64,000 nucleotides of DNA from Phallusia mammillata (taxonomy: Eukaryota), in contig OZ281500.1 in assembly GCA_965637545.1 (NCBI GenBank), positions 4,588,001 through 4,652,000 on the forward strand. Reading direction: 5' to 3'. Positions 5,396 through 37,292 of this stretch are shown piece after piece. The notes under the pieces are model-generated. The model saw only the letters and a program-made list of their open reading frames with translations, ran no database searches and was not told the DNA's origin. The number at the start of each line of letters is the position of its first letter. Position 1 is the first letter of the stretch. Both the position numbers and the translations under genes were made by a program.

Positions 5396-8300
5396 ATGAA
5401 ACTGATTGTCGCTTTGTTATCGGTTTTTCTGCTTGTCAACAATGGATCAGGTGAGATTTTTTTGCATGTTTGTCGCCAAATGACTTTAACAGGTAAGCTA
5501 GTCCGGTATTGGAAAATCAGCTTGAAGTAAAATCCAGCTTTGTAGATAATGCGAAGAGCTTGATATAAAAATGACGTGTGTATATCTTGCAAACTGTATT
5601 GTGAAATCATTGACATTCGTTGACACCTAAATTATTTTTTTAAGTCGCATTTTTTAGGGTACTCTGGACGCCTAAAATATTTTTTGTTTTGTTTTACGTT
5701 TCAGTCCTAAGTGTTTTGACCAGAGTTTAAATTTGAGGCCGTTGAATGAGGGTTCGGTCCGGATTCGGCCTTAAACTTCCATTAAACCGGAATTGATTCG
5801 GCCTCGACTTCACACTTGGCCTTATGCTGCATCTTCACCAACTTGTGGTCTAAATTCGGGCTTTATTTGTATAAATGGGTTCGGGTCGGGTTTCGGGCTT
5901 GTACTTTTGGGTTCGGACCTGGTTTGGACCTTAACTTCGGGCCCGCTTGAAAGTTTGTTTTTATCTAACGAGAAACTAACATATTAGGTTACAGCTGCCA
6001 TAGGAGGCAATTGCGACTCTGTCTAAGCTTTCCTGAAGAACCCGAAAACTTATTTACCTTAGGCAAACAAGTAGTCATATTTTCGAGACACTCAATTGAC
6101 CTAAAGTCACGTTGTGTTGTGAACATTATTGCATCGCGATAATTTTTCTTTAAATTACTTTTCGTTACTGTTTTTGCAAAGTGGGTCTGAAATTGGGGCC
6201 CGAACTCGAAAGTACATGAACGAAAACCGACACGACTCTAAAAAAAACAGACAAATCAAGCCCAAAAGTTAATAAAAAATCAGCAAAAATTACGCCTTGT
6301 GTGAAGTCAGGCCCGAATCATGTCCGTTATAAACTCAAGCCCGAAACCTGACTCGAAAAGCACGGACCGACTTGCAACTTTGGCAGTATTGGCTGTTTTG
6401 CATGTGAAACATTTAAAACGCAACGAAAAAATGTTTAAAATTCGCTGGATGCAGAGTCGTGTTTATTTACGGTAGATTTGCAGTAATGCCAAGTCAAGAG
6501 GTCACGGGAAATCAACGCTATTTGCCACAAAGTAAAGTTCATGTCCTTGATTTGACCTTCCAAGATAGACGACCAAATGCGCCTTAAAATGAACTTTCGG
6601 CTATAGCAAGGCCACGAAGCTTAGCTTGTAGTTTAATGGTCTATTTCGTCACGGTGTGATGACGAAATTAATTTTCAGATTACTATCGATGTTATTTTTT
6701 ATTGTTGTGGATAAAGCGTGATCAAGTGCTAAAGCTTTCAAAAAAATCGGAAAATACTCTATTCATTCGAAGTAAATGCGAAAAAAAGATAAACTACCTG
6801 TTATTTAAGCTGACAAAAAATAGCCACCTATTTTGATTCACGTATAGTGGTCCACATTGGTTAACCGAAATCAACGGTTAACAACCTGAGGTTCGCGGAC
6901 CTCCAATGGGCCCGTGAGATGGTTCTGGATCTAAAGGGTCATAAATGCAAAGCTTCTCAATGGGGTAAATTGTCCATAGACTTGAATACTTTTAGGGGGT
7001 ATGCAACAACTATACAAAAGGGAGCCACTAACCTATAGAGTAGATTGACCTAGGTGCTGTGTAGTATTTAAATGCTGCCATTTTTGCACATTTCTTCGCC
7101 TACATCTCATCAGTTTGTGTCGACATCGATAAAATTCTTGTTTGACTTTCTAACAACAGCCATACCACGGTGGTCCTGCTCTAACGTTGTTCCACCCGAA
7201 AACGGACGATTAGAGATCCTCTCATCCGGCGTATTCGCTAAAAATACGGCCATGCTGAGATTTCTCTGTAACGATGGTTACACTCTTAAAGGACAATGTG
7301 TTGCTCTCTGCGTAGACGGCATCGTTATGTATGGAAAACCGATTTGTGTTGGTAAGTTGTATAAGCAATCAGTTGTTAATTTTCGATAAAGTTTGTTTTG
7401 CTATCTATTCTATGATCAGTATTGTTGCCATATAGGGATGCCAATACCTTTCAAAGTGTAGTTCACCTACAAGTTCATCGCGTAAATGCAGCCCCTTATC
7501 CAAGTATAAATAGAATGAAAACTATTTGATTGGCATGATTAAGTTAACAATAAAGGCTCGGATAAAAGTTGTTTACCGTTGCAACTTGCTCAAATTGGAA
7601 AGACCAAATATTGCTGTTATAAAATGTCAACTTTTTTGGGGGTGACCAGCTTTTAAGTCGGTTTAAAGTTTAAACCATGGTATTTATTTGTAGACACGAG
7701 GAAATGCCCAGCAATAGAACACCCAACTCACGGCAAGATGCGCCAACTAACAAACGCTGAGTTGATGCGAAAAAGCTTTGACTACGACACCGATAAACTA
7801 CACGCAATGCTTACTGCAATGTCGCAAAGCGCTAGTGACCTTGCCACAGTCAGTGGCCGAATAAGTCTTGTCCGAGAACTCCGAACAACTTTGGAAACTA
7901 TTAAGGGTTTGGCAGGTCTGGCGAAATCAGCTGTGGCCAAACCCGGCCCTGTGATTGACCAAGCACCGCTGTACGCACTGGAGTGTGACGACGGGTACGT
8001 GCTGGATTCGGCGATATTTTATAAGTATTGTCAAGAAGGCAAGTTTCAACCAGTGGCCATGCCAACTTGTATTGGTAAGTTCTGTTGTGAAGCAAATTTA
8101 ATTTAATCATATTATTTACTTTTTCATGTAGTACTTTTCATGTAATGTAGTACTAAAAGGCCAGTGTTTGTCAAAAGTGCACATTGCGAGTTTATCAAGT
8201 ATATATTCGTATTTCCATCTCAGAAAAACTATCTTGCCCTCATCCGACCGCGCCGGGAAACGGTTCCGTAAATGTGTATCGAACGAATACAGTACGTGGA

Positions 8301-11300
8301 GAGTCGTCTGTGGTGAGGGCGGTGTTCTCATGCAACCGGGGATTTCGGTTGGACCCGCCCGAAAGCAAGTTGGCCCATTGTGGTTCGGACAACAGCTGGT
8401 CATCTGTCCCACCAACATGTACAAGTACGAATCAGCTGTTAAATATTGGTCTATGTAAATACATAAAGACGTATTTTTCGCAGTCATACAGAAAACTATG
8501 TCCATTCTGTCATTTTAAACTACGACTAAAAACTGCCATGAAACCACGCTTGCTTGAAGGCCAAAGTTACAAACTATTTTATGCAGTTGTGTATTTGTAA
8601 AACTTATTTTTGCTGACTCAGCAAAATTTGTCTAGTAAGTACGATATGGTCGGACCATGTAATAATGCATTACAGCATTGAAATAAGTTTTGTTTGATGT
8701 TTTGTTCTTGAAATTATCCAATTCAAGATGTCATTGCCCGCAGAGGCTTACAGTAGACCTCGCCACCAAATTTTAACCACATCATACAGCGTTTGCGGTG
8801 TGACAGTTCCGCCTTTTTGGACAAAAAACACCACACGCAGGTGTTAGCTGTAAATCTGCGTGAAAAGGAAGATCTTATTTCCGCCAAGTAGATTCTCCCG
8901 TTTCCTAAACTTAAGGCTCCTTTGTTTCAGCTTTGTCACCTTGAGATTAGGTCCAGCCACTAATCGTTGTGTTTTTGTCAAGTGCTCTGCCCGTGGGCAC
9001 CGAACCCTCCTTACGGACGTCTCGTGGCAAAGGGCGACACCCTGCGTCTAATTTGCAATCCTGGATACAAACTGGAAGGACCAGAAGAAATTTTTTGCCA
9101 AGACGATGGTAACTGGGGGACCCAAAACTCATTTTGTGTCCGTAAGTACCACTGCATATTCGAAATGTATCTGCAATAAAAAGACTTCCGGGGTTCCTCA
9201 AAGTTTTAAGCTAGGCCCACCGTATGTTAATGACAAAAAGAGGACGCATTTTCATTAAAGTTTCTTACTGCAACTTAAAAAAGTTTTGGACGAATTTCCT
9301 TATTTAATGAATACGGTTCAATTTTTTAGTTTTCTGTTGATTTTAACAAACAATAAACATGCTTTTGTTTTGTTATGCTTAATAATGGATTAACTAAGGT
9401 AAAAGTGTTAAAAAAAGAACTAGTTGTGAATATTTTAGCGTCCTCAGCCGACAACCTTCAACAAGAGGACGTATAGTAGGTCTATTTTAACCTATACGGG
9501 CCGGTGATTACTCTGGGGAGTTTGTCAAATATGGTATTCTGTACTTTATGTGAAATACGCGATGGATTTTTCATTAAAATTTACCGCACAATTACTTCAC
9601 TGAATTTTCACATGTCTATTGGCAACATCTGCTGATATTCATATTAAAAATTTAAAAATAGCTGACCATTACAGCAGAACTAAATACAGAAGCAGAAACG
9701 TAATTCATGTCGCTGCTATGCCGCGGTCATTTTTTTGCCTAATTTGGTGCCGCTACAATGACAGCCTATTTTTAATTAAAGGTTTGCCCTGCGTTACAAT
9801 TCCCACTGCAATGCGCTCATTCCTATTTTTAATCTCTGTAATTCAACGCATTGCCAATGTCTGTGTGTAAACGCTTTGCCACACCCTTTGCTGCCGCGCG
9901 TGGCCACGACAAACTAGCCGTTGGTGTGGCACAAAATCCTGCTGTAATCCAAATAATCCAATTACAACGGGTTTCATATTGCCCTGCGTTATAAGGCTTG
10001 TCCTTATGCAGCGGATTACATATTTACCAGGACTACTACCATGACGTAATTTTGCGGCCGCAATTCACGTATTAAGGATAAGACGTTTACGTTTTCCAAC
10101 GCTGGTGGTTAGTTGGTTTGTTTGACTGGTGTTTTTACCATAACATGGTGCTTTTTCGGTCTAAATGCCATTCAGTTACATAGCCGGTTGTGTGCAAAAA
10201 CCGTTTTGACCTTTGATTACTATACGCTTAGTATGAAACTTATCTTACATTGCGTTTGTCTAACACAATATTATAAAAGCGAAAATAAAAATGAGATGCG
10301 AACAGCAGGGAAAATCCTACTAATTGCTTGTAAATGACAAAATTTAAACTAACCGATTTGTTAATGTTAAGAATAGCGTATAAATTGTCTGCATTTAGGC
10401 GTCCCAACTTAAAACGACCTATTACGATTTAGGTAAAATATTTTTTGTTGAAAGCTGGTAGTGTGCTTTTAAGCAGTTTAAGCTTTAAATCAATAGGATA
10501 AAATATGACATTTTTGCAGTTGAGGTTCCTTGTCAAATTATTGAAGAAGTGCCAATTGGAGCTTTAATCTCCTCAACTCCTCTTAAGAAGTCGAAAAACA
10601 ATAAGACTTTGGAAGGTTGTCCTGGTAAGAGTCTGGAATTATACTTGGACAAAATCTACTGTTTCATGTGTGTTCAATACGCATTATCATACATTTGATT
10701 TTATGTGCAACACTTTACCTTTAAGATTTGGAATTTCATGACAGGTTACCGCCCATGTTACGCCCCTTCACACCCGCACCACGGCAAATACACTGTCATG
10801 GGTGACATCGAGCCCCCGTTGCCCCTTTCCCGAATTCGCTTTGGGTGCAGAGACGGGTACAGGCTCCGGGGAAGTCCTTCGGTTACGTGCGGACCGAAAG
10901 GAGAATGGACGAGCCAGTTTCCAGTTTGTGACAGTAGGTGGCGCAATTTCACTGATTTGTTGAAAAATATTTAGAACGTTTTTTACCATGGTGTTGTGTG
11001 GCAGTTGTATGGCAACGCTTTGGCAGAGGCATCCTGAAGGCGACCTGTTTTGTACGTCGAAACGTCGGTATAAAAGTGCAATTGCCAGAATGTTAGGTAG
11101 CAACAACTTTTGTATGGCACCGCTAGTTGTATTACTACTAAAAGCAAATCTAACTTTTATTAGAAATAACCTGCTACTTGTTGACTCCCGGGCCGAATAA
11201 TAAGAAAAAAGGTAACGTTTAGTGTTGTAGTTTTAAAACCAGTTCGTTTTCCGCAGAAATTCCGTCCTGTCCGCGGTTAAATCGCATTCCTAATGGTTTT

Positions 11301-14300
11301 ACATACTGGGCCAACTCGGTGCCTCAAAACGAGCATCTCTCCGCTCTGCTGTTTGTTTGTCGCAGAGGTTTCACACTTATTGGAGATCCGATCTTACTTT
11401 GTGTCAATGGAAAATGGATGGGAAGAAAACCAAGATGTGTGGGTAAGCGAGAATGCCTTGGTGTATGATTTCGATAGAAGTTACTTATTCAAATGGAATT
11501 TTATTAAATTTTATTAAACATTATAGGAATTGTTATTTCAGCAACAAACTTGTGTGTTGTGCGCAGACATGGGGCAATTCGTATTCGTCATTCGTATTCG
11601 AATGCATTCGAATACAGGTTTTGCCACCTTCGTGCTGTATTCGAATGATTTTGGCTTTCGTTCGATAGTGCATGAATACAATTCGAATAGTTGATGTTAT
11701 CTTTTGAACCAACAATATATGAATACAAAAGCTTAAGTAAATTTATTCGAATACAATTCGAATTGTTCTAGGTTTTTGCCAACCTAAGAATTTGCAAATT
11801 CGAATACACGATATTTTTTACGAATACAATTCGAATTGTTGTCGGCCTTTGGCAACGTAACAATTCGTAAAATCGAATACATGACTACATTTGTACGAAT
11901 ACAATTCGAATTGTTGTCAGCCTGTTTCTACGTAACAATTCGCAAAATCGAATACATGACTACATTTTTACGAATACAATTCGAATTGTTGTCAGCCTGT
12001 TTCTACGTAACAATTCGCAAAATCGAATACATAACTACATTTTTACGAATACAATTCGAATTGTCGATTACCTCCAGACTAGGAGTAGTCGAGATTCGAG
12101 AATATTTTGCTATATATTGTTGCCAAATAGATTCGAATACAATTCAAATTGACAGTGAATGTGACCTGATTTGACAAGTTTTTGATTATGTTACGAAACA
12201 ATGACACATAGAAGTTTAACTGTGACGTTACATAAATGGAATTGTGTTACAAAGCTTGCAACATTGGGTTGATCTCAGCACATGACAGGTGTAGCGTGTT
12301 CATGAAGCAAACATCTCATGTAAATTTGGTTAAATTTATGTTACGGAGACTTAAATCAGTCAAGCTGAGGTGGCAAACAAAGCTCGTTGGTTTACATTTT
12401 CACCAATAAATTTGCAATTCATAAACCCATGTTACATTTTGATCGAATACCTTTTAAGTTTCGGGGCGCTTTTATTTCTTTTATTTTCCGCAACTGCAAA
12501 TATCCGAATCGGTGCATTCGAATGCTATTCAATTGTTTGCTTCTTACTACAACTGAACAATTCGTGAATACAAATAACTAGAACTATTAATTCGAATACA
12601 ATTCGAATTGCTACTTCTCAAAAAGTACGAAGTATTCATGAATACGAATACACGCTGTGGGTTATTCGAATAGTATTCGAATTACACATTGTTGTTTTTT
12701 GGTCAACTATTCATGAATACTAATACTTGACACGTTTTATTCGAATACAATTCGAATTGCTGCCACCTTAATATTACAAAACAATTCGTGAATACGAATA
12801 CTTGCCTCGTTTTATTCGAATACCATTCGAATTGCTGTCACTCAAAAATTACCAAAGTATTCATGAATTCGAATACAGTCATGCAGGTATTCGTAAAGTA
12901 TTCGAATACAGGACGCGTGTATTCGACCCCCATGTCTGGTTGTGCGATTTACAAAATACAGCGATTTTAGTTTGTTTTGTTTTTTGTTAAAGATACGGAT
13001 ATTGCTCATTTGAAACACTTAGGCCCGTAGGTTTTAAAGCAATTGTTTGACGAAAGTTTAGGTTGTTTGTTTATTTTCTAGAGCGAGTTTTCTGTCCTCC
13101 AATCCAAGCTCCAATTAACGGACAGTTTGAAAATCCGATATCAAGGCCGGCTCCACAATCAACAGTTGTTCAGGTTTCATGCATAAGAGGTTATAAATTA
13201 ACGGGTCAAAGTTCATTTCTATGCATGACCTCTGGCCAATGGAGTTCAAATCCGCCAACCTGCGAACGTAAGATTGACAGGATAGAAGCGTGTTTGTACC
13301 GTTTTCTTTAAAAACGTTTTATGAGAGTTTGGTAAAAAGCATCGATGACTATACACTGTTATCAGCTACTGTGGTATACCTTTATCGGCTAAATATACAC
13401 TGTTATCGGATATGTAACCTGTGTTGTGATTCGGAACTATGGATAGTAATTGCCCATGGTTTTGGCTAAAAACAGTTCGAAAATGTCAACTTAAAAATAG
13501 GTTTCTACAATACAGTTCATCCATAGCCTGTAAACTTTAAAATACAGGGTGCTTGCTCGATTACAAGTGCTGTTTTTGGTTATTTTGTTTACTTGAGTTG
13601 TTTTATATTTGTAGCTGTATGCGAGATTCCTGCCAACTTGAAAAACGGCCGCATTTCGTTTCCAATCCACTTCGGACGATTTCCGAGTACTTTTGCACGA
13701 TTTCAATGCGACGATGGATTTGCCCTAATGGGTCAAGAGTTAATGATGTGCCGGGACGGGCAATGGTCACATGGTCTGCCTACATGTCAAGGTGAGTGTA
13801 CAAAATGCTGAGAATATATATTTTGCTAAATAGTGTTTGCCTGTACAATTTAACGCAAGCACTATGGACAGTTAGTGCAGTAAGATTGAGCATTTTATTA
13901 CCAACAATATCTGTACATCACTTGTTGGGATTAGCAACCGTGATGTACGTACGTATCGTTGAGTTGTAGCTATATTAATGGCATGTAGGCCTAAATGTGA
14001 ATCTCTGTTGACAAATTACACCTTGTCATTTTACTTATGAATCCTTAAAAAGAATTTTTTTGTGTCTTAGTTCTGTTTATTGGCGAAATCGGCCCTCAAA
14101 ACATACAGGTTTTTGTATTGGCTACCGGTATTTTCCTACTTTGTACGAGTTTGTTGATAAATTGTTTGAAAGTGGGAAGCAGTAGTGAAATTTATGCACA
14201 AGAGTCTAATTCTCATTAAATTAATGCTTTTTACAGCCGCCGTCGATGAGTGTCCGGAGCTAACTGCTCCAACCAACGGACAAGTTATTACGACGCAGAG

Positions 14301-16338
14301 CGATGATATCACGGGCGCTCGGTTTCTCTGCGACGCGGGCTTCGCTCTGATTGGTTCCCGTTGGATCACGTGCGACAAGACGGGGCGATGGTCGGGCGCA
14401 GTTCCCACGTGCAAAGGTAAACGTTCTTAGATATAATATCAATGTGTGTTTTTATTGCTAATTATATCAAAAAAGTCGTAATTTTCGTGCCAGTTTTTCA
14501 CTATTAAGTCGAAAAACATCGTGTCCAATGCTTAAGGGTAAAACAACAATTAAAGTAATGGATCAAAACCACAAACAGCAAAGAATGAACTGACAATCAC
14601 TAACTTTCTTTTTCGACTATATTTCTGTAAAACCAATGGACGATAAAATCCTTGGTTAAAACTGAAACAGTCAGTTTCAGGTAAAAGAATATAGATATAT
14701 TTAGCCTAAATTGCACCATCGGTTCTTGAAACGCTTGCAGTCATTTATTACAACTTAAAATTTATTAATGCTGATGTCCATCATTTCAACATTTTTGTCT
14801 TCGTTGGTATCTTACCGACAAACTGACCTTCAATGCAGTGGTCTGACCACCTTGGCCAGTTTTAAACACGCAAGTTCGAGCGTAATTTTAATCCTATCGC
14901 GATTTGGCTAAAATTTGCGCCCATTGTCTTCGCACGCATTGTTTACTGCTTATAATCGGATGCCTCTTTCTCGTAAGTGGGGCTTCCCGGTAATTTCGAC
15001 AGGATTAGCCTATTGTGTTGTTCACGGGCAACGGCTTAATGTCGTCCGATTGTAGCATGAAACGGTTGTTGTTTTCCGTGGATTTACAGAGCGTCTCGTC
15101 CGCGTGGGAGAAGGTTTAAGATTTTTTTCAGCAAAATATGTTGCAAAAGTGTCGCTGGTTACTTGCTCATTTTCGTCACGAACAGTTAATTATCCATGCA
15201 TATGTTTTGTAATCAAAATCAGGATGTATACAAAAATTTTCAAATGTGCCTACAGTGCAATAACTGAAAGTCCATTAAAGTGCCAACCTTGCATGTCAGC
15301 CAAAATCTTTCTTACAAACGTTGAATTTCCGTCCTAAATATTAGTCTTCCTTTTTCTTTTTATGTTTCTGCCACATTTCAATTCGGAGCGTTTATTCCGA
15401 TTCGTGAAACTCACACACAATATTAAAATCCAAACTCTCAGTCGTCGACTTGTTGAGAAATTGTAAACCACATGAAACAGATTATTTCAAGTACTGTTAA
15501 TTTGTTTGACATCTAAGGCCCCCGCTTGTACGCATTACAGATTGTGATCGAATTGCAAATTCTTTGTGGTCAGCGAACATCAAATATTGCAACGTAGCTG
15601 AACTTTTCCACCCGGTTAAACATGTATTGTTTTAAGCGCATCCTGTTATTGCGAACACCGATGGCTTTTAAAAGCCCTAAATGTTCGACAACTTACAAGT
15701 TTCAAATAGACGTCAATTTAAAGTTTAAAGTCACTGACACTTTTAACACGTAAGGTTACGCTGATCTAAAGCGTACTTTTTTTGCAGAAGAACTAAAATG
15801 CCCTGAAATTCCCCGAGTAGCTCATCAGAGCCATCTAGTGGTAAGCGACACGGTCACTGAGCTGGTAGTTACCTTCAGATGCGACTTTGGCTTCCAGCTT
15901 ATGGGACCAAGAGAACTTCGCTGCGTTGCACCCGGCACGTGGCAAGGAAACTTCCCAGAGTGCAAAGGTTTGTAGCCTACACGCCAACATATGAGTGTGA
16001 ACAATTAAATTAAAAAAAAGTCGTTTTTAAAAAATGCAGGCACAGTCATATTAGGCTATTAGCTGCGAATATTTAAACTCGCAAGCCAGAGGTGCTCACA
16101 CCTTTTTCTTTTGTATACTTCTGGGTACTTTTTATTATTTTCGCCCAAAAGTAAATTTTGCTCTCTAAATTTTAAAGCAAATCTACAGTTGGGTCTTATA
16201 CACTGAAAACATACATACAAATATATACACTGAAAACAACAGAGATTGTTATTTGTCGCATGTTATATATTTGCAGAGCGTGCCCCGGACATTGTGGATT
16301 CCGGTATATTTGAAGGTCCAATAGAAGGTCGAGGTTGA
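5396..16338 (+). CDS. Secreted multi-CCP (Sushi/SCR) protein, ~750 aa: signal peptide + 10 CCP domains + one 2-Cys mini-module + short tail; RCA/factor H-like architecture
   Basis: 13 exons, all introns phase 1: 5396-5450 (MKLIVALLSVFLLVNNGS), 7160-7351, 7694-8074, 8224-8424, 8983-9141 (AAG acceptor), 10520-10624, 10745-10933, 11257-11442, 13082-13267, 13615-13791, 14237-14416, 15788-15967, 16277-16338. Total 2253 nt = 750 aa + stop. Each CCP exon shows C..P.NG ... F.C..G(Y/F).L.G....C...G.W....P.C. No transmembrane segment or GPI-type tail. Confidence 0.9.
5721..6382. mobile_element. Degraded non-autonomous DNA element with ccga/tcgg subterminal motifs (copy 1 of 3)
   Basis: Ends cagagttt... 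/ ...gacttgcaactttg. Many ttcggg/cccgaa motifs. Segments are homologous to 29620-29961 and 46222-46545. No intact TSD. Confidence 0.6.
6872..7030. mobile_element. Highly degraded hAT/Buster-like MITE relic
   Basis: caacctgaggttcgcggacc... and ...aaaagggagccact resemble the ends of the cagtggttcccaac MITEs elsewhere in the window; no TSD. Confidence 0.35.
11564..12938. mobile_element. Non-autonomous hAT element, 1375 bp, in the intron between CCP exons 8 and 9
   Basis: TIRs cagacatgggg / ccccatgtctg (11 bp, perfect); perfect 8-bp TSD gttgtgcg (11556-11563, 12939-12946). The interior is saturated with gaatac/gtattc and caattcgaattg motifs. Confidence 0.92.
11821..12062. repeat. 75-bp tandem repeat (~3.2 units) inside the hAT element
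   Basis: cgaatacaattcgaattg recurs at 11821, 11896, 11971 and 12046, with near-identical sequence between copies. Confidence 0.9.
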
Positions 16339-17388
16339 TTTCAATCCAAATCATAAAGTGTTTACCGATTCGAAATGCGCAGATTGTTATTTCCTCTCAA
16401 AACGTTTGTGACGAATTTTCAGCGTAAGAAACTCGGACTTCTGGTATCAAACGAAATACGCCCATGCAGTTACATTTATCTTTTTAAGTCAGTTACAACT
16501 TTGCTTCTCGTTTCATTCTGTAAAATTTTCTTTGCACTTGTTTTCTTCTTTTTATGATTCCTTTCATTGCAATGTTCCGTTTTTGTTGTTGTTGTTTTTG
16601 AAACCTAATGGTTTGCTTTTATTTTGCGTTTGTCGGTGCAAAACGCGACATAAGTTGCAGTCTCTTGCACGTTTTAAATGTAAATATATACAAAAAAAGT
16701 GTTTTCTGTAAAAAGGCTGTGTTCATAAAAACGTGAAAAGTAAGGTGTGATATGAAGACCCTTTTAATAGTTTTTACTTATTTTCACGAGAAATCACAAG
16801 TCTAATGAAACGCGTTTGTTGAGCCATTAGCTAAACTAGGTAAATAGCATTGATATATCTGTATCGTTTCAAAAAACAAAAATATCATTTAAAAATCAAC
16901 AGCCGTTAGTGGGCAGTGTTAAGTTGCAGCGATACAATTTTACAACATGTGATCTACCGGTACTTCGATCATATTTCAAATTTAAACAAAACTTGCCATA
17001 GTTTGCTTTATCAACTGGTTTAATTTAAAACACCACCTTGAAAAATAATGTTCAAAAGACCGTTGTGTAAACGAGAAAGGAACATTCTAACAGTAGCCTA
17101 CGTTATGAGTTCACTGTCCCTTTTTTCTTTTTTCTCGTATTGCATCACTCATAGCGACGCGTACCGGCAAATTTCAAAGCGTGTGATGTCATCAGCCATT
17201 CATTCGATTCGTCATTCGTCAGAGGGTTGTAGTTGGGGTACATTGATATTCAGTTTAGACAATTATGCAGTTATAATGAACGGTTTCTTGCCACAATATA
17301 TGTTTGAACGGGACTAACGTTTTTTAGTATTTTCAATCTTTTTAAACGAACCCTACCATACTCTTATTGCAAAAAATAAAATACTGCT

Positions 17389-35300: not shown

Positions 35301-37292
35301 AACAAGATATTGTTACTGCAAAAAATATGAATTTTGTGGCATTTTGACTGTTTAATAAATCTTTATGCATTTCTATTCCTTCTAAGTTGTGTACTTTTTT
35401 AAGCCAGGTTTTTATTTTATTTCACTGCTAAGTAGTAAGTGGGTTGCTAAAATGTTTACAGAATTAAGAAAGGTTGACTTGAGCATTTGGCCTAGTTAGT
35501 GGGACCTAATCTGATGCTGTATTTGTGTTTAAACACAAGGTACATGACCTTTGATGCAAAATGTAGCCAAATCATTGTGCCTCAAAACGCGATATGCAAT
35601 CTCATACCCAGAGGTGTAGGAAGCACCACAAATAACAGCCTAAATTAGCCGCGAAACATACCAAGGAAATACCGCAATCTTTTTCTGGCGTTCTGTATAC
35701 TTTTACCAGTAAGCGGTCGCGAAAAAGACCAGGCCTTCCATCTTGTCAAGCCCTCAGGCGTGGCCGACACGCACCAACAACAAGCACAGTGCAACTTCTT
35801 AACATTCCAGGGCGTCTTTGCGAGACGCCAAAACGCGTTCCGTGCCACTTGCGCCTTGCAGGAATCGGTAACACAGTGCTATAGGAAAGTGATATGCTCG
35901 TTTTACTTTCACATAGCATTGGGATACAGATTTTCTGCTCAATCGACTAACCAATGGAAAAACAATTTCTGATAACGAAATCGCGTGTATTGAATGCAGC
36001 AGCTGTTATTGCAGATTCAGCACAAAATCTGTAGTTTTAGAAATTGTCGCACATTTCAAGGCCTGTAGTTTAGTTGAATGGAGCCTAGTCCGTCTTTGGA
36101 CATGTGATATCACAGTGGTTGTATACTGCCTGTTTAAATAACGCAACAGACAGTATCACTACAGTGGCGCCACTTGTCTAACTATCGAACACCGCATAAA
36201 AAAGTTTAAACAATGTTAAGGCTTGAAGGTAGCAAACCTCAAAACGCAGTGAGCTGTGAAAAGCTACTTATTCAAAGAATGCGAAAAGTAGGTTTTTAAC
36301 TCGTTCGAGTTAAGTGATGAAGCGCGTCGTGTCTGGTGCGTTTCCTTGCATTCATTTCCTTATGCGTTTGTTTCCAGATTAATACACAAGCCCAGTGGAC
36401 GAAGTTACCACACTGAATTCAACCCACCACAGAAACCTATGACTGATGATGTACGTTCTGTTGCGATTTATGACAAAAAGAATATTAACTTGCGTTTTAC
36501 TGTTCACTGGTGGCTGCAATGTTGTTTAAAATTTCGACTTGCAATTTGACCTAGTACTCAAAACTGTTTTTTTTACGAACTTGCGTCTACGAACATGCCC
36601 AACAATACCTATTGGCAAGGGTTTGGGAAAATGGGCAAAAAAGTATAGCAAAACCGCCTTGTAATTTCCGCTATGTTTTCACTATAAAATGTAATCGGCC
36701 AACTTTTGGGCCATACGAACTTAGCCATGTAATACATCATATTACGTTTATACGCTAAAATTCTTGTTATCAAAAGATTGGTAAATATTGGACTACTTAG
36801 TCAGAACCAGGTGATCTATGAACCCTATTTGAAACAATAAAATTATTTTATTACCAAAAAAACAAACCCTATTTTACAGGTCACAGGCGAACCCCTCATC
36901 CGACGATCGGATGACAACGAAACAGCGTTGAAAACTCGTCTGGAAGCCTACCACAAAATGACATCTCCACTGGTAGATTACTATTCCAAGAAAGGCATCC
37001 ATTCGTCGATTAATGCTGCCCAATCTCCCAACATTGTGTACAAGGACTTATGTGACACGTTTATGAAGTGCCGTAAGTTTGGAAGTGATTTTTTTTGCTT
37101 TGAATCAAAATTTTGTAACGTTTTTGCTCCGTTCTTTGTTAATGTTAGGTTTTATGTTACAACGCATGTGTTTTATGCCAAAGGTCATATAGTTACCAAT
37201 GTAAAAAATATACTTTCTCTAGAGTTTTCTGGTCAACATTTTAGGGAAGTTTTTTTTACCGTTTAATAAATATTGTCTTTTTTGCAGTTTGA
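32324..37292 (+). CDS. AK2: Adenylate kinase 2 (mitochondrial intermembrane space), ~230 aa
   Basis: Exons 32324-32413, 32832-32936, 34467-34598 (AAG acceptor), 35106-35200, 36378-36450, 36880-37072, 37288-37292; 693 nt. P-loop [32 protein letters not shown] region [19 protein letters not shown]. Confidence 0.96.
33005..33488. mobile_element. hAT/Buster-type MITE, 484 bp, AK2 intron 2
   Basis: TIRs cagtggttcccaac / gttgggaaccaccg; TSD atttaatt / atttagtt (1 mismatch). Confidence 0.85.
33632..33999. mobile_element. Tc2/pogo-type MITE, 368 bp, AK2 intron 2
   Basis: 26-bp TIR ccgtattttacggaccataaggcgca (2 mismatches to the right end); TA TSD; internal gtgcgccttat subterminal repeats. Confidence 0.9.

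What the first reader, a model, noticed from the sequence alone, without database searches (positions are those of the whole stretch)
5396..16338. Orphan secreted 10-CCP protein built entirely from phase-1 exon modules
The protein has a signal peptide plus only CCP modules, with no protease, EGF, transmembrane or GPI domain. That is the architecture of soluble regulators of complement activation (factor H, C4BP; established knowledge). The ten modules are very divergent from each other, so this is not a recent tandem expansion. Three non-standard features (helical insertion, half-module, odd Cys) occur in one chain, which suggests a lineage-specific complement, adhesion or gamete/allorecognition protein (inference).
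Basis: partly seen in the sequence, partly recalled or inferred. Interest (0 to 1): 0.7.

Follow-up and report, generated by a model that had tools for sequence, protein, structure and literature searches.

The report
Secreted ten-sushi-domain sea-squirt protein
This is a real, expressed, single-copy gene for a secreted protein made of ten sushi (CCP) domains. It is an ordinary kind of protein in a genome full of such domains, and its one unusual feature is a long, conserved insertion in the second domain.

Summary
The gene is real. Twelve exons on the + strand (5396-16338) encode a signal peptide, ten CCP/Sushi modules with one exon each, and a 20-residue tail. All eleven introns are phase 1 with GT..AG ends. 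Spliced RNA contigs from four runs in two studies confirm the CCP6-7-8-9-10-tail junctions. They read through the stop at 16338 into a 3'UTR and show no downstream exon, so there is no TM, GPI or protease part.

The modules are divergent (mean 31.5% identity). CCP1 has a fifth cysteine, giving 41 in total. CCP2 is 126 aa with an insertion of about 75 residues, predicted helical only at low confidence. The "half-module" is not confirmed: all ten modules have four consensus cysteines.

"Orphan" is wrong in part. An unidentified second species, found in seven metagenome assemblies, carries a collinear orthologue. It has the same phase-1 exons, near-identical exon lengths, the CCP2 insertion and an extra cysteine in CCP1, at 29-53% identity. 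There is no close paralogue in this genome and no characterised relative.

Function is inferred only. It is a soluble CCP-string binding protein, with complement regulation as the leading single candidate (about 0.3). The gene is a new member of a known kind and of modest interest.

The parts
5396..5450 (+). Exon 1: start codon and signal peptide (18 codons plus 1 base), phase-1 donor GT
   Evidence: The core is hydrophobic, an in-frame stop lies upstream, and small residues sit at -3/-1 of the likely cleavage site. The X1 RNA contig length (2561 nt) fits a 181-nt 5'UTR plus a 2148-nt CDS plus a 232-nt 3'UTR.
7160..7351 (+). CCP1 exon: five cysteines, no consensus Trp, the module best conserved with species B (53%)
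   Evidence: Sushi 17 bits, below the cut-off; local HMM, self-trained, 78.9 bits; orthologue also has five Cys, with the extra one shifted by one column.
7694..8074 (+). CCP2 exon, 126 aa: a CCP module split by an insertion of about 75 residues in the hypervariable-loop region
   Evidence: The only relative among 1.84 billion representative proteins that covers the insertion is P0003 (28% identity, BLASTP 7e-18).
8224..8424 (+). CCP3 exon
   Evidence: 35.3 bits; 43% to species B.
8983..9141 (+). CCP4 exon: short (52 aa) but with four Cys
   Evidence: 38.6 bits; 37.5% to species B.
10745..10933 (+). CCP5 exon
   Evidence: 40.8 bits. The loose end before 11257 in RNA contigs equals the end of this exon.
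11257..11442 (+). CCP6 exon: a complete module, not a half
   Evidence: Pfam positions 1-56 of 56, 30.9 bits; joint 11441/2 to 13081/2.
13082..13267 (+). CCP7 exon: no equivalent found in species B
13615..13791 (+). CCP8 exon
   Evidence: 41% to species B.
14237..14416 (+). CCP9 exon
   Evidence: (44.1 bits).
15788..15967 (+). CCP10 exon: its weak donor (gtttgt) is used in transcripts
   Evidence: One search shows the joint 15965/7 to 16275/7 in all four runs.
16277..16338 (+). Terminal coding exon part: a 20-residue acidic, non-hydrophobic tail and the TGA stop
   Evidence: One search shows it is not a CCP remnant by the local HMM.
16339..16570 (+). 3'UTR as far as RNA contigs reach; the end is not mapped exactly because contigs break at a T-rich run
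   Evidence: Contigs end at 16561-16571, apart from one (X2) that stops at 16464. Depth is zero over 16600-17199 in all four runs.

Best explanation
A single-copy, transcribed gene encodes a 715-aa secreted protein: a signal peptide, ten CCP (sushi) modules joined by short linkers, and a 20-residue acidic tail. This part is shown. By inference, it works outside the cell as an elongated beads-on-a-string binding protein. The N-terminal modules are its most likely ligand-binding end, because CCP1 is the best conserved. The unpaired cysteine of CCP1 and the conserved insertion of about 75 residues in CCP2 are probable sites of partner binding or covalent or oligomeric assembly. The leading single candidate role is fluid-phase regulation of the ascidian C3/factor B complement system, that is, binding of C3b-like fragments as factor H and C4BP do. 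I put that specific role at about 0.3. The general 'soluble CCP-string binder' reading is far more secure.
For: Gene structure and expression:
- Pfam Sushi exceeds the cut-off on 8 of 10 exons.
- Exactly ten CCP exons lie in the window.
- All introns are phase 1 with GT..AG ends.
- Spliced RNA contigs in four runs of two studies confirm five junctions and the stop, with no downstream exon.
- Runs X1-X3 hold 0.17-0.19 of the sampled words of a stretch whose exons make up about 0.22 of it.

Constraint:
- A collinear orthologue in a second species matches CCP1-6 and CCP8 one-to-one. Diagonal scores are 103-169 against 99 or less off the diagonal.
- It has the same phase-1 exon bounds and nearly the same exon lengths.
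- It keeps an extra Cys in CCP1.
- It keeps the CCP2 insertion at the same length, with 17 identical positions.
- There is no close paralogue in the genome.

Complement-type reading:
- A CCP-only soluble architecture is that of factor H, C4BP, F13B and beta2-GPI (established knowledge).
- The best PDB sequence matches are CR1, CR2, factor H and MCP.
- Ascidians have C3, factor B and MASPs but only putative CCP regulators (PMC5465252).
Against: - CCP domains are promiscuous, and this genome has at least 1774 candidate Sushi exons. Architecture therefore hardly narrows the function.
- The PDB hits are generic CCP similarity.
- No orthology to any vertebrate RCA protein was found.
- The tissue or stage of the expressing runs is unknown, and seven other runs of the species hold almost none of the words.
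- The two structure models of CCP2 are of low confidence.
- The whole spliced protein was not searched as one query, so full-length annotated relatives of other architectures could have been missed.
- The CCP1-5 junctions rest on splice signals, contig length and the orthologue, not on reads laid directly.
Confidence: 0.55

Rival explanations
1. It is an extracellular matrix or cell-surface organiser rather than an immune regulator. In this reading the secreted CCP string scaffolds or clusters other proteins in the tunic, egg coat, epithelium or synapse, as C. elegans LEV-9, Drosophila Hig and vertebrate SRPX2 do. The CCP1 free cysteine and the CCP2 insertion would serve as attachment points.
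For: - CCP-only or CCP-rich secreted proteins in invertebrates that have been studied are mostly of this type (my own knowledge).
- Expression is seen in some but not other RNA runs of the species, which fits a stage- or tissue-specific matrix role.
- Earlier notes place a mucin-like gene 10 kb before the window and a three-finger-CCP-vWA gene 28.7 kb before it.
- For another ascidian CCP family in this genome, a follow-up favoured a matrix adaptor (unchecked).
Against: There is no matrix-type domain (EGF, vWA, WAP, HYR), no repeat-rich or glycosylated linker, and only one NxS/T site in the mature chain. No expression site is known.
Confidence: 0.3
2. It is a carrier or regulatory subunit for another secreted protein or lipid, in the manner of the ten-sushi factor XIII B chain or beta2-glycoprotein I. 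The atypical CCP1/CCP2 pair would form the docking site.
For: - Ten CCPs and nothing else is the layout of F13B (my own knowledge; F13B is among the PDB hits).
- Language-model look-alikes of CCP2 include clusters of the aberrant fifth domain of beta2-GPI, at score 0.91, which is a lead only.
- The unpaired Cys is conserved.
Against: There is no specific sequence relation to F13B or beta2-GPI beyond the CCP fold. No partner has been identified.
Confidence: 0.1
3. It is a gamete-recognition or allorecognition marker that varies between individuals, analogous to the polymorphic sushi protein vCRL1 of Ciona or to mouse ZP3R/sp56.
For: RNA contigs differ from the genome at 4.3-4.6% of sites in CCP6 and CCP8, against 1.1% or less in the other exons and the UTR. 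At least three haplotypes are visible at CCP8. vCRL1 sets a precedent (PMC5465252, PMC9265791).
Against: - There are 8 nonsynonymous codon changes against 8 synonymous, so no excess of replacements.
- The gene is single copy.
- There is no TM segment, unlike vCRL1.
- Modules are conserved one-to-one across species.
- P. mammillata is reported to be self-fertile (PMC9265791), if the species assignment holds.
- vCRL1 itself was later shown not to act in self/non-self recognition (PMC9265791).
Confidence: 0.05

Closest known systems
Vertebrate soluble regulators of complement activation (factor H, C4BP alpha/beta)
   Same: Both have a signal peptide plus CCP modules only, one module per exon with phase-1 introns and short linkers. 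Individual modules give their best PDB sequence matches to CR1, CR2, factor H and MCP.
   Different: No orthology was found. There is no C-terminal oligomerisation helix as in C4BP. CCP2 carries an internal insertion of about 75 residues and CCP1 a fifth Cys, neither of which I know from RCA proteins. C3b binding is untested.
Coagulation factor XIII B chain (ten sushi domains) and beta2-glycoprotein I (five, the last aberrant)
   Same: Both are CCP-only secreted proteins. F13B has the same module count. Beta2-GPI shows that one CCP of a string can be remodelled into a special binding module.
   Different: Only generic CCP similarity was found. The remodelled module here is the second one, and it is changed by a loop insertion, not a C-terminal extension.
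Ciona vCRL1 (variable complement receptor-like 1)
   Same: It is an ascidian CCP-containing protein with allelic variation (PMC5465252, PMC9265791).
   Different: As I recall it, vCRL1 is membrane-anchored; the papers read here describe it as a variable receptor. PMC5465252 reports splice variants and high variability between individuals. This gene has no TM exon in transcripts and only moderate variation.
Botryllus schlosseri putative complement-control protein cDNA (Pancer et al. 1995, cited in PMC5465252)
   Same: It is a tunicate transcript made of CCP/SCR repeats and proposed as a complement regulator without functional proof.
Invertebrate secreted CCP organisers (C. elegans LEV-9, Drosophila Hig)
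   Same: They are secreted proteins dominated by CCP modules that act by binding and clustering partners.
   Different: As I recall, those proteins carry WAP or Ig domains as well. No relation was tested.

Membership tests
CCP / Sushi / SCR domain (Pfam PF00084) | About 60 residues with four consensus Cys plus conserved Pro/Gly/Trp, scoring above the Pfam gathering cut-off | tested here: met
   Eight exons score 30.9-44.1 bits against the 20.7 cut-off. CCP1 (17 bits) and CCP2 (no hit) fail the Pfam cut-off. CCP1 matches a local HMM that was itself trained on it and the other eight unsplit modules. CCP2, left out of that training, matches only in two weak pieces (19.6 bits overall). Both keep the four consensus Cys.
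CCP / Sushi / SCR domain (Pfam PF00084) | One module per exon, flanked by phase-1 introns | tested here: met
   Searches cover all eleven introns. RNA confirms five of them. Species B has the same layout.
Regulators of complement activation (factor H / C4BP type) | Extracellular region made only of CCP modules; soluble forms lack a TM or GPI anchor | tested here: met
   The tail is 20 non-hydrophobic residues, followed by the stop and a 3'UTR.
Regulators of complement activation (factor H / C4BP type) | Sequence orthology to a known RCA member | tested here: not met
The HMMER search of 1.84 billion representatives used the CCP2 exon only, not the other modules. It returned six hits, none an RCA orthologue. 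PDB matches, tested with the CCP9 exon, are generic multi-CCP similarity.
Regulators of complement activation (factor H / C4BP type) | Binds C3b/C4b and has cofactor or decay-accelerating activity | not testable with these tools
   This needs recombinant protein and ascidian C3.
vCRL1-type variable CCP receptors of ascidians | Transmembrane anchor | tested here: not met
   Transcripts in four runs end in a short hydrophilic tail, and no alternative exon is seen.
vCRL1-type variable CCP receptors of ascidians | Hypervariability between individuals | tested here: inconclusive
   Exons differ from the genome by 0.3-4.6%, with 8 nonsynonymous against 8 synonymous changes and only a few haplotypes sampled.

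The most novel reading that the evidence does not exclude
CCP2 may be a new module type: a sushi domain whose hypervariable loop has been expanded into a conserved helical subdomain of about 75 residues. Together with the unpaired cysteine of CCP1, it could assemble the chain into disulfide-linked oligomers. The protein would then be a tunicate-specific, C4BP-like multi-armed fluid-phase regulator of C3, and the first functional complement regulator outside vertebrates.
Probability: 0.1. Interest if true: 0.6.

Novelty: new member of a known kind. Interest (0 to 1): 0.3.

Why it matters
Ascidians have C3, factor B and MASPs, but no regulator of their complement system has been shown to work. 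A conserved, expressed, soluble CCP-only protein is a reasonable candidate to clone and test. Separately, a CCP module with a conserved insertion of about 75 residues is unusual for this otherwise compact fold. I know of no described CCP with an insertion of that size, and only one relative appeared among 1.84 billion representative proteins. A structure of it would extend what the fold is known to tolerate. Otherwise the gene is one of very many CCP genes in this genome, and nothing here changes current views.

Tried and rejected
1. Word-index protein searches with the CCP2 exon and with a two-species CCP1 alignment were both blank. This is uninformative, because only proteins of 0.55-1.75 times the exon length are seen.
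2. Pfam on CCP2 gave no family at E of 0.1 or less.
3. I tested the terminal exon and 3'UTR as an eroded eleventh CCP (a possible 'half-module'), reading stops as X. There was no HMM signal, so I rejected this.
4. I tested the amphipathic-helix claim by hydrophobic moment against 1000 shuffles. The shuffles reached the observed value at 0.055 for the window and 0.49 for species B. It is not supported.
5. I tested synteny by comparing 13 kb upstream of the species-B gene with 40 kb upstream plus the window. Only the CCP exons match, so synteny adds nothing.
6. I could not identify species B. The sample ids are not in the paper library.
7. I looked for a CCP7 equivalent in species B and found none between its CCP6 and its CCP8-like exon.
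8. I did not run a fold search on the CCP2 models, because pLDDT of 44-53 would give meaningless matches.
9. I did not search the joined spliced protein as one sequence. All searches were exon by exon, by reference.
10. I rejected a pseudogene or unexpressed reading because of the spliced RNA.
11. I rejected a recent tandem expansion because of the module divergence and the one-to-one cross-species pairing.
Full report
**What is there**

The stretch 5396-16338 holds one gene on the + strand. Six-frame inspection and splice-site listing give twelve exons:
- Exon 1 (5396-5450) carries the start codon and a hydrophobic signal-type peptide.
- Ten exons each hold one CCP module: 7160-7351, 7694-8074, 8224-8424, 8983-9141, 10745-10933, 11257-11442, 13082-13267, 13615-13791, 14237-14416 and 15788-15967.
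- The terminal exon has its coding part at 16277-16338 and ends in TGA.

All eleven introns are GT..AG and phase 1. The coding sequence is 2148 nt, so the protein has 715 residues, not 750. An in-frame stop lies 13 codons upstream of the ATG.

Pfam places eight of the ten exons above the Sushi gathering score (30.9-44.1 bits against 20.7). CCP1 reaches 17 bits and CCP2 gets no hit. A local HMM was built from the nine unsplit modules, so their own scores against it are circular. Apart from those nine it finds only CCP2, which matches it in two weak pieces around a long insertion (19.6 bits overall), and nothing else on either strand of the 64 kb. This is far more than chance would give.

**Transcripts**

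Five runs of the same organism, guessed to be RNA, hold 0.09-0.19 of the sampled words of a stretch whose exons make up about 0.22 of it. I laid contigs of four of these runs, from two studies, on 11200-17199.

Each run has a contig that joins CCP6 to CCP7, CCP7 to CCP8 and CCP8 to CCP9. Three runs also join CCP9 to CCP10, and all four join CCP10 to the terminal exon. Every joint falls at the predicted GT..AG sites. Because the introns are removed, these runs are RNA.

The weak donor after CCP10 (gtttgt) is the one used. The protein therefore ends with a 20-residue, non-hydrophobic, acidic tail, not at the stop that follows in the unspliced frame. Most contigs run on through the stop to 16561-16571, where they break at a T-rich run. 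All four runs have zero depth over 16600-17199.

The loose end upstream of CCP6 equals the last bases of CCP5. The longest contig (2561 nt) fits 181 nt of 5'UTR, 2148 nt of CDS and 232 nt of 3'UTR. They rest on splice signals, contig length and the orthologue.

**The three 'non-standard features'**

1. Odd cysteine: confirmed. CCP1 has five Cys and the chain has 41. By the CCP consensus, the extra one sits four residues before Cys3.
2. Insertion: confirmed as an insertion. CCP2 is 126 residues. It has a normal start (Cys1, Pro, Gly motif) and a normal second half (Cys2, Cys3, Cys4), separated by about 75 extra residues.
   - Two AlphaFold models, one of this exon and one of the orthologous exon, place helices at about 32-47 and 52-76/83. 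Their pLDDT is only 53 and 44.
   - A hydrophobic-moment test does not beat shuffles.
   - So 'helical' is plausible and 'amphipathic' is unsupported.
3. Half-module: not confirmed.
   - CCP6, which looks truncated in a plain ORF list, is complete once its true acceptor is used (Pfam positions 1-56 of 56).
   - CCP4 is short but has four Cys.
   - The terminal exon and 3'UTR do not score as a decayed CCP.

**Divergence of the modules**

Pairwise identity is 17-44%, mean 31.5%. CCP7-10 are somewhat closer to each other than to the rest.

**Not an orphan**

A HMMER search of 1.84 billion representative proteins with the CCP2 exon gave six hits. Five match only the C-terminal half-CCP. One, P0003 (148 aa), aligns over the whole exon including the insertion (BLASTP 7e-18, 28% identity).

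P0003 is an exon-sized ORF on a 31.8-kb metagenome contig. The same locus occurs in seven assemblies: five JGI and two ENA. On these contigs the + strand carries CCP exons that match CCP1 to CCP6 of the window one-to-one and in order. Diagonal local scores are 169, 147, 154, 103, 154 and 150, against 99 or less off the diagonal. By tblastn the identities are 53, 29, 43, 37.5, 39 and 45%.

The exons have the same phase-1 GT..AG bounds. Their lengths are 189/384/222/153/189/186 nt, against 192/381/201/159/189/186 nt here. The orthologue's CCP1 also has five Cys, with the extra one shifted by one column. Its CCP2 insertion has the same length to within a few residues and 17 identical positions.

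Downstream of CCP6 it has a clear CCP8 counterpart (41%) and then two exons closest to CCP9, CCP7 or CCP10. There is no CCP7 equivalent before the contigs end, so the module number probably differs between the species.

In the window's own genome, the CCP1 and CCP2 exons hit only themselves. CCP8 hits only generic CCPs at 36 bits or less, weaker than the 62 bits to species B. The gene is therefore single copy, and the other locus is its orthologue.

I could not name species B and found no conserved neighbour upstream. I did not verify that.

**Allelic variation**

RNA contigs differ from the genome at 8 of 185 sites in CCP6 and at 5-8 of 175 in CCP8. In CCP7, CCP9, CCP10 and the terminal exon plus UTR the differences are only 1-2 per 180-296 sites. 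At least three haplotypes are visible at CCP8. The listed coding changes amount to 8 nonsynonymous codon changes and 8 synonymous ones. That is no excess of replacements.

**How it probably works**

What is shown is a secreted chain of ten CCPs with short linkers and no other domain, under purifying constraint across two species. Everything beyond that is inference.

CCP strings act as extended binders. The conserved CCP1, its unpaired Cys and the conserved CCP2 insertion mark the N-terminus as the likely business end.

The single most likely role is fluid-phase regulation of the ascidian C3/factor B system:
- The architecture is that of factor H, C4BP, F13B and beta2-GPI.
- Single modules match CR1, CR2, factor H and MCP best.
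- Ascidian complement has only putative CCP regulators (PMC5465252).

I put that role at no more than about 0.3. This genome has at least 1774 candidate Sushi exons, and the similarity is generic.

A matrix or cell-surface organiser role is about as likely. A carrier-subunit role is possible. Allorecognition or gamete recognition is the least likely: the gene is single copy with moderate variation and no TM segment, P. mammillata is reported self-fertile, and Ciona vCRL1 was itself shown not to act in self/non-self recognition (PMC9265791).

**Comparison and verdict**

This is a new, uncharacterised member of a well-known kind: secreted CCP-only proteins built from phase-1 exon modules. The one feature that stands apart is the conserved insertion in CCP2, which has a single relative among 1.84 billion representative proteins. 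Language-model look-alikes are Sushi clusters and beta2-GPI Sushi_2 clusters, which is a lead only.

Interest is modest (0.3).

Noticed in passing
window 11741-12064 and 12705-12907 (intron between CCP6 and CCP7): Two related arrays of a 75-bp tandem repeat. Short RNA contigs map across this intron at depths up to about 333 and run on into unlike sequence. This looks like a dispersed repeat family that is transcribed elsewhere in the genome.
   Followed up: partly
window 11257-11442 and 13615-13791: Allelic divergence between RNA contigs and the genome is uneven. It is about 4.3-4.6% in CCP6 and CCP8, against 1.1% or less in CCP7, CCP9, CCP10 and the 3'UTR. At least three haplotypes are visible at CCP8.
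   Followed up: partly
window 16277-16338: The C-terminal tail ends in Ile-Glu-Gly-Arg-Gly. This is the recognition motif of factor Xa-type trypsin-like proteases and is possibly a coincidence. Conservation could not be checked because the orthologous contigs end before this point.
   Followed up: no
L009:1-5900 (- strand), same in L008, L010, L011: The species-B orthologue has no counterpart of CCP7 between its CCP6 and its CCP8-like exon. All seven metagenome contigs stop about 1 kb after the ninth CCP exon, perhaps at a repeat.
   Followed up: partly
L001, L003-L013 (JGI samples 3300001913, 3300001689 and others; ENA ERZ27241799, ERZ27241789): These metagenome assemblies contain contigs of up to 33 kb of animal DNA with GT..AG introns and CCP exons. 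This is presumably host DNA of another ascidian. The species was not identified.
   Followed up: partly
window 36928-37266 (+): An ORF whose first 45 or so residues look, by eye, like the C-terminal part of an adenylate kinase. It is probably an exon of a neighbouring gene. I did not check it with any tool.
   Followed up: no
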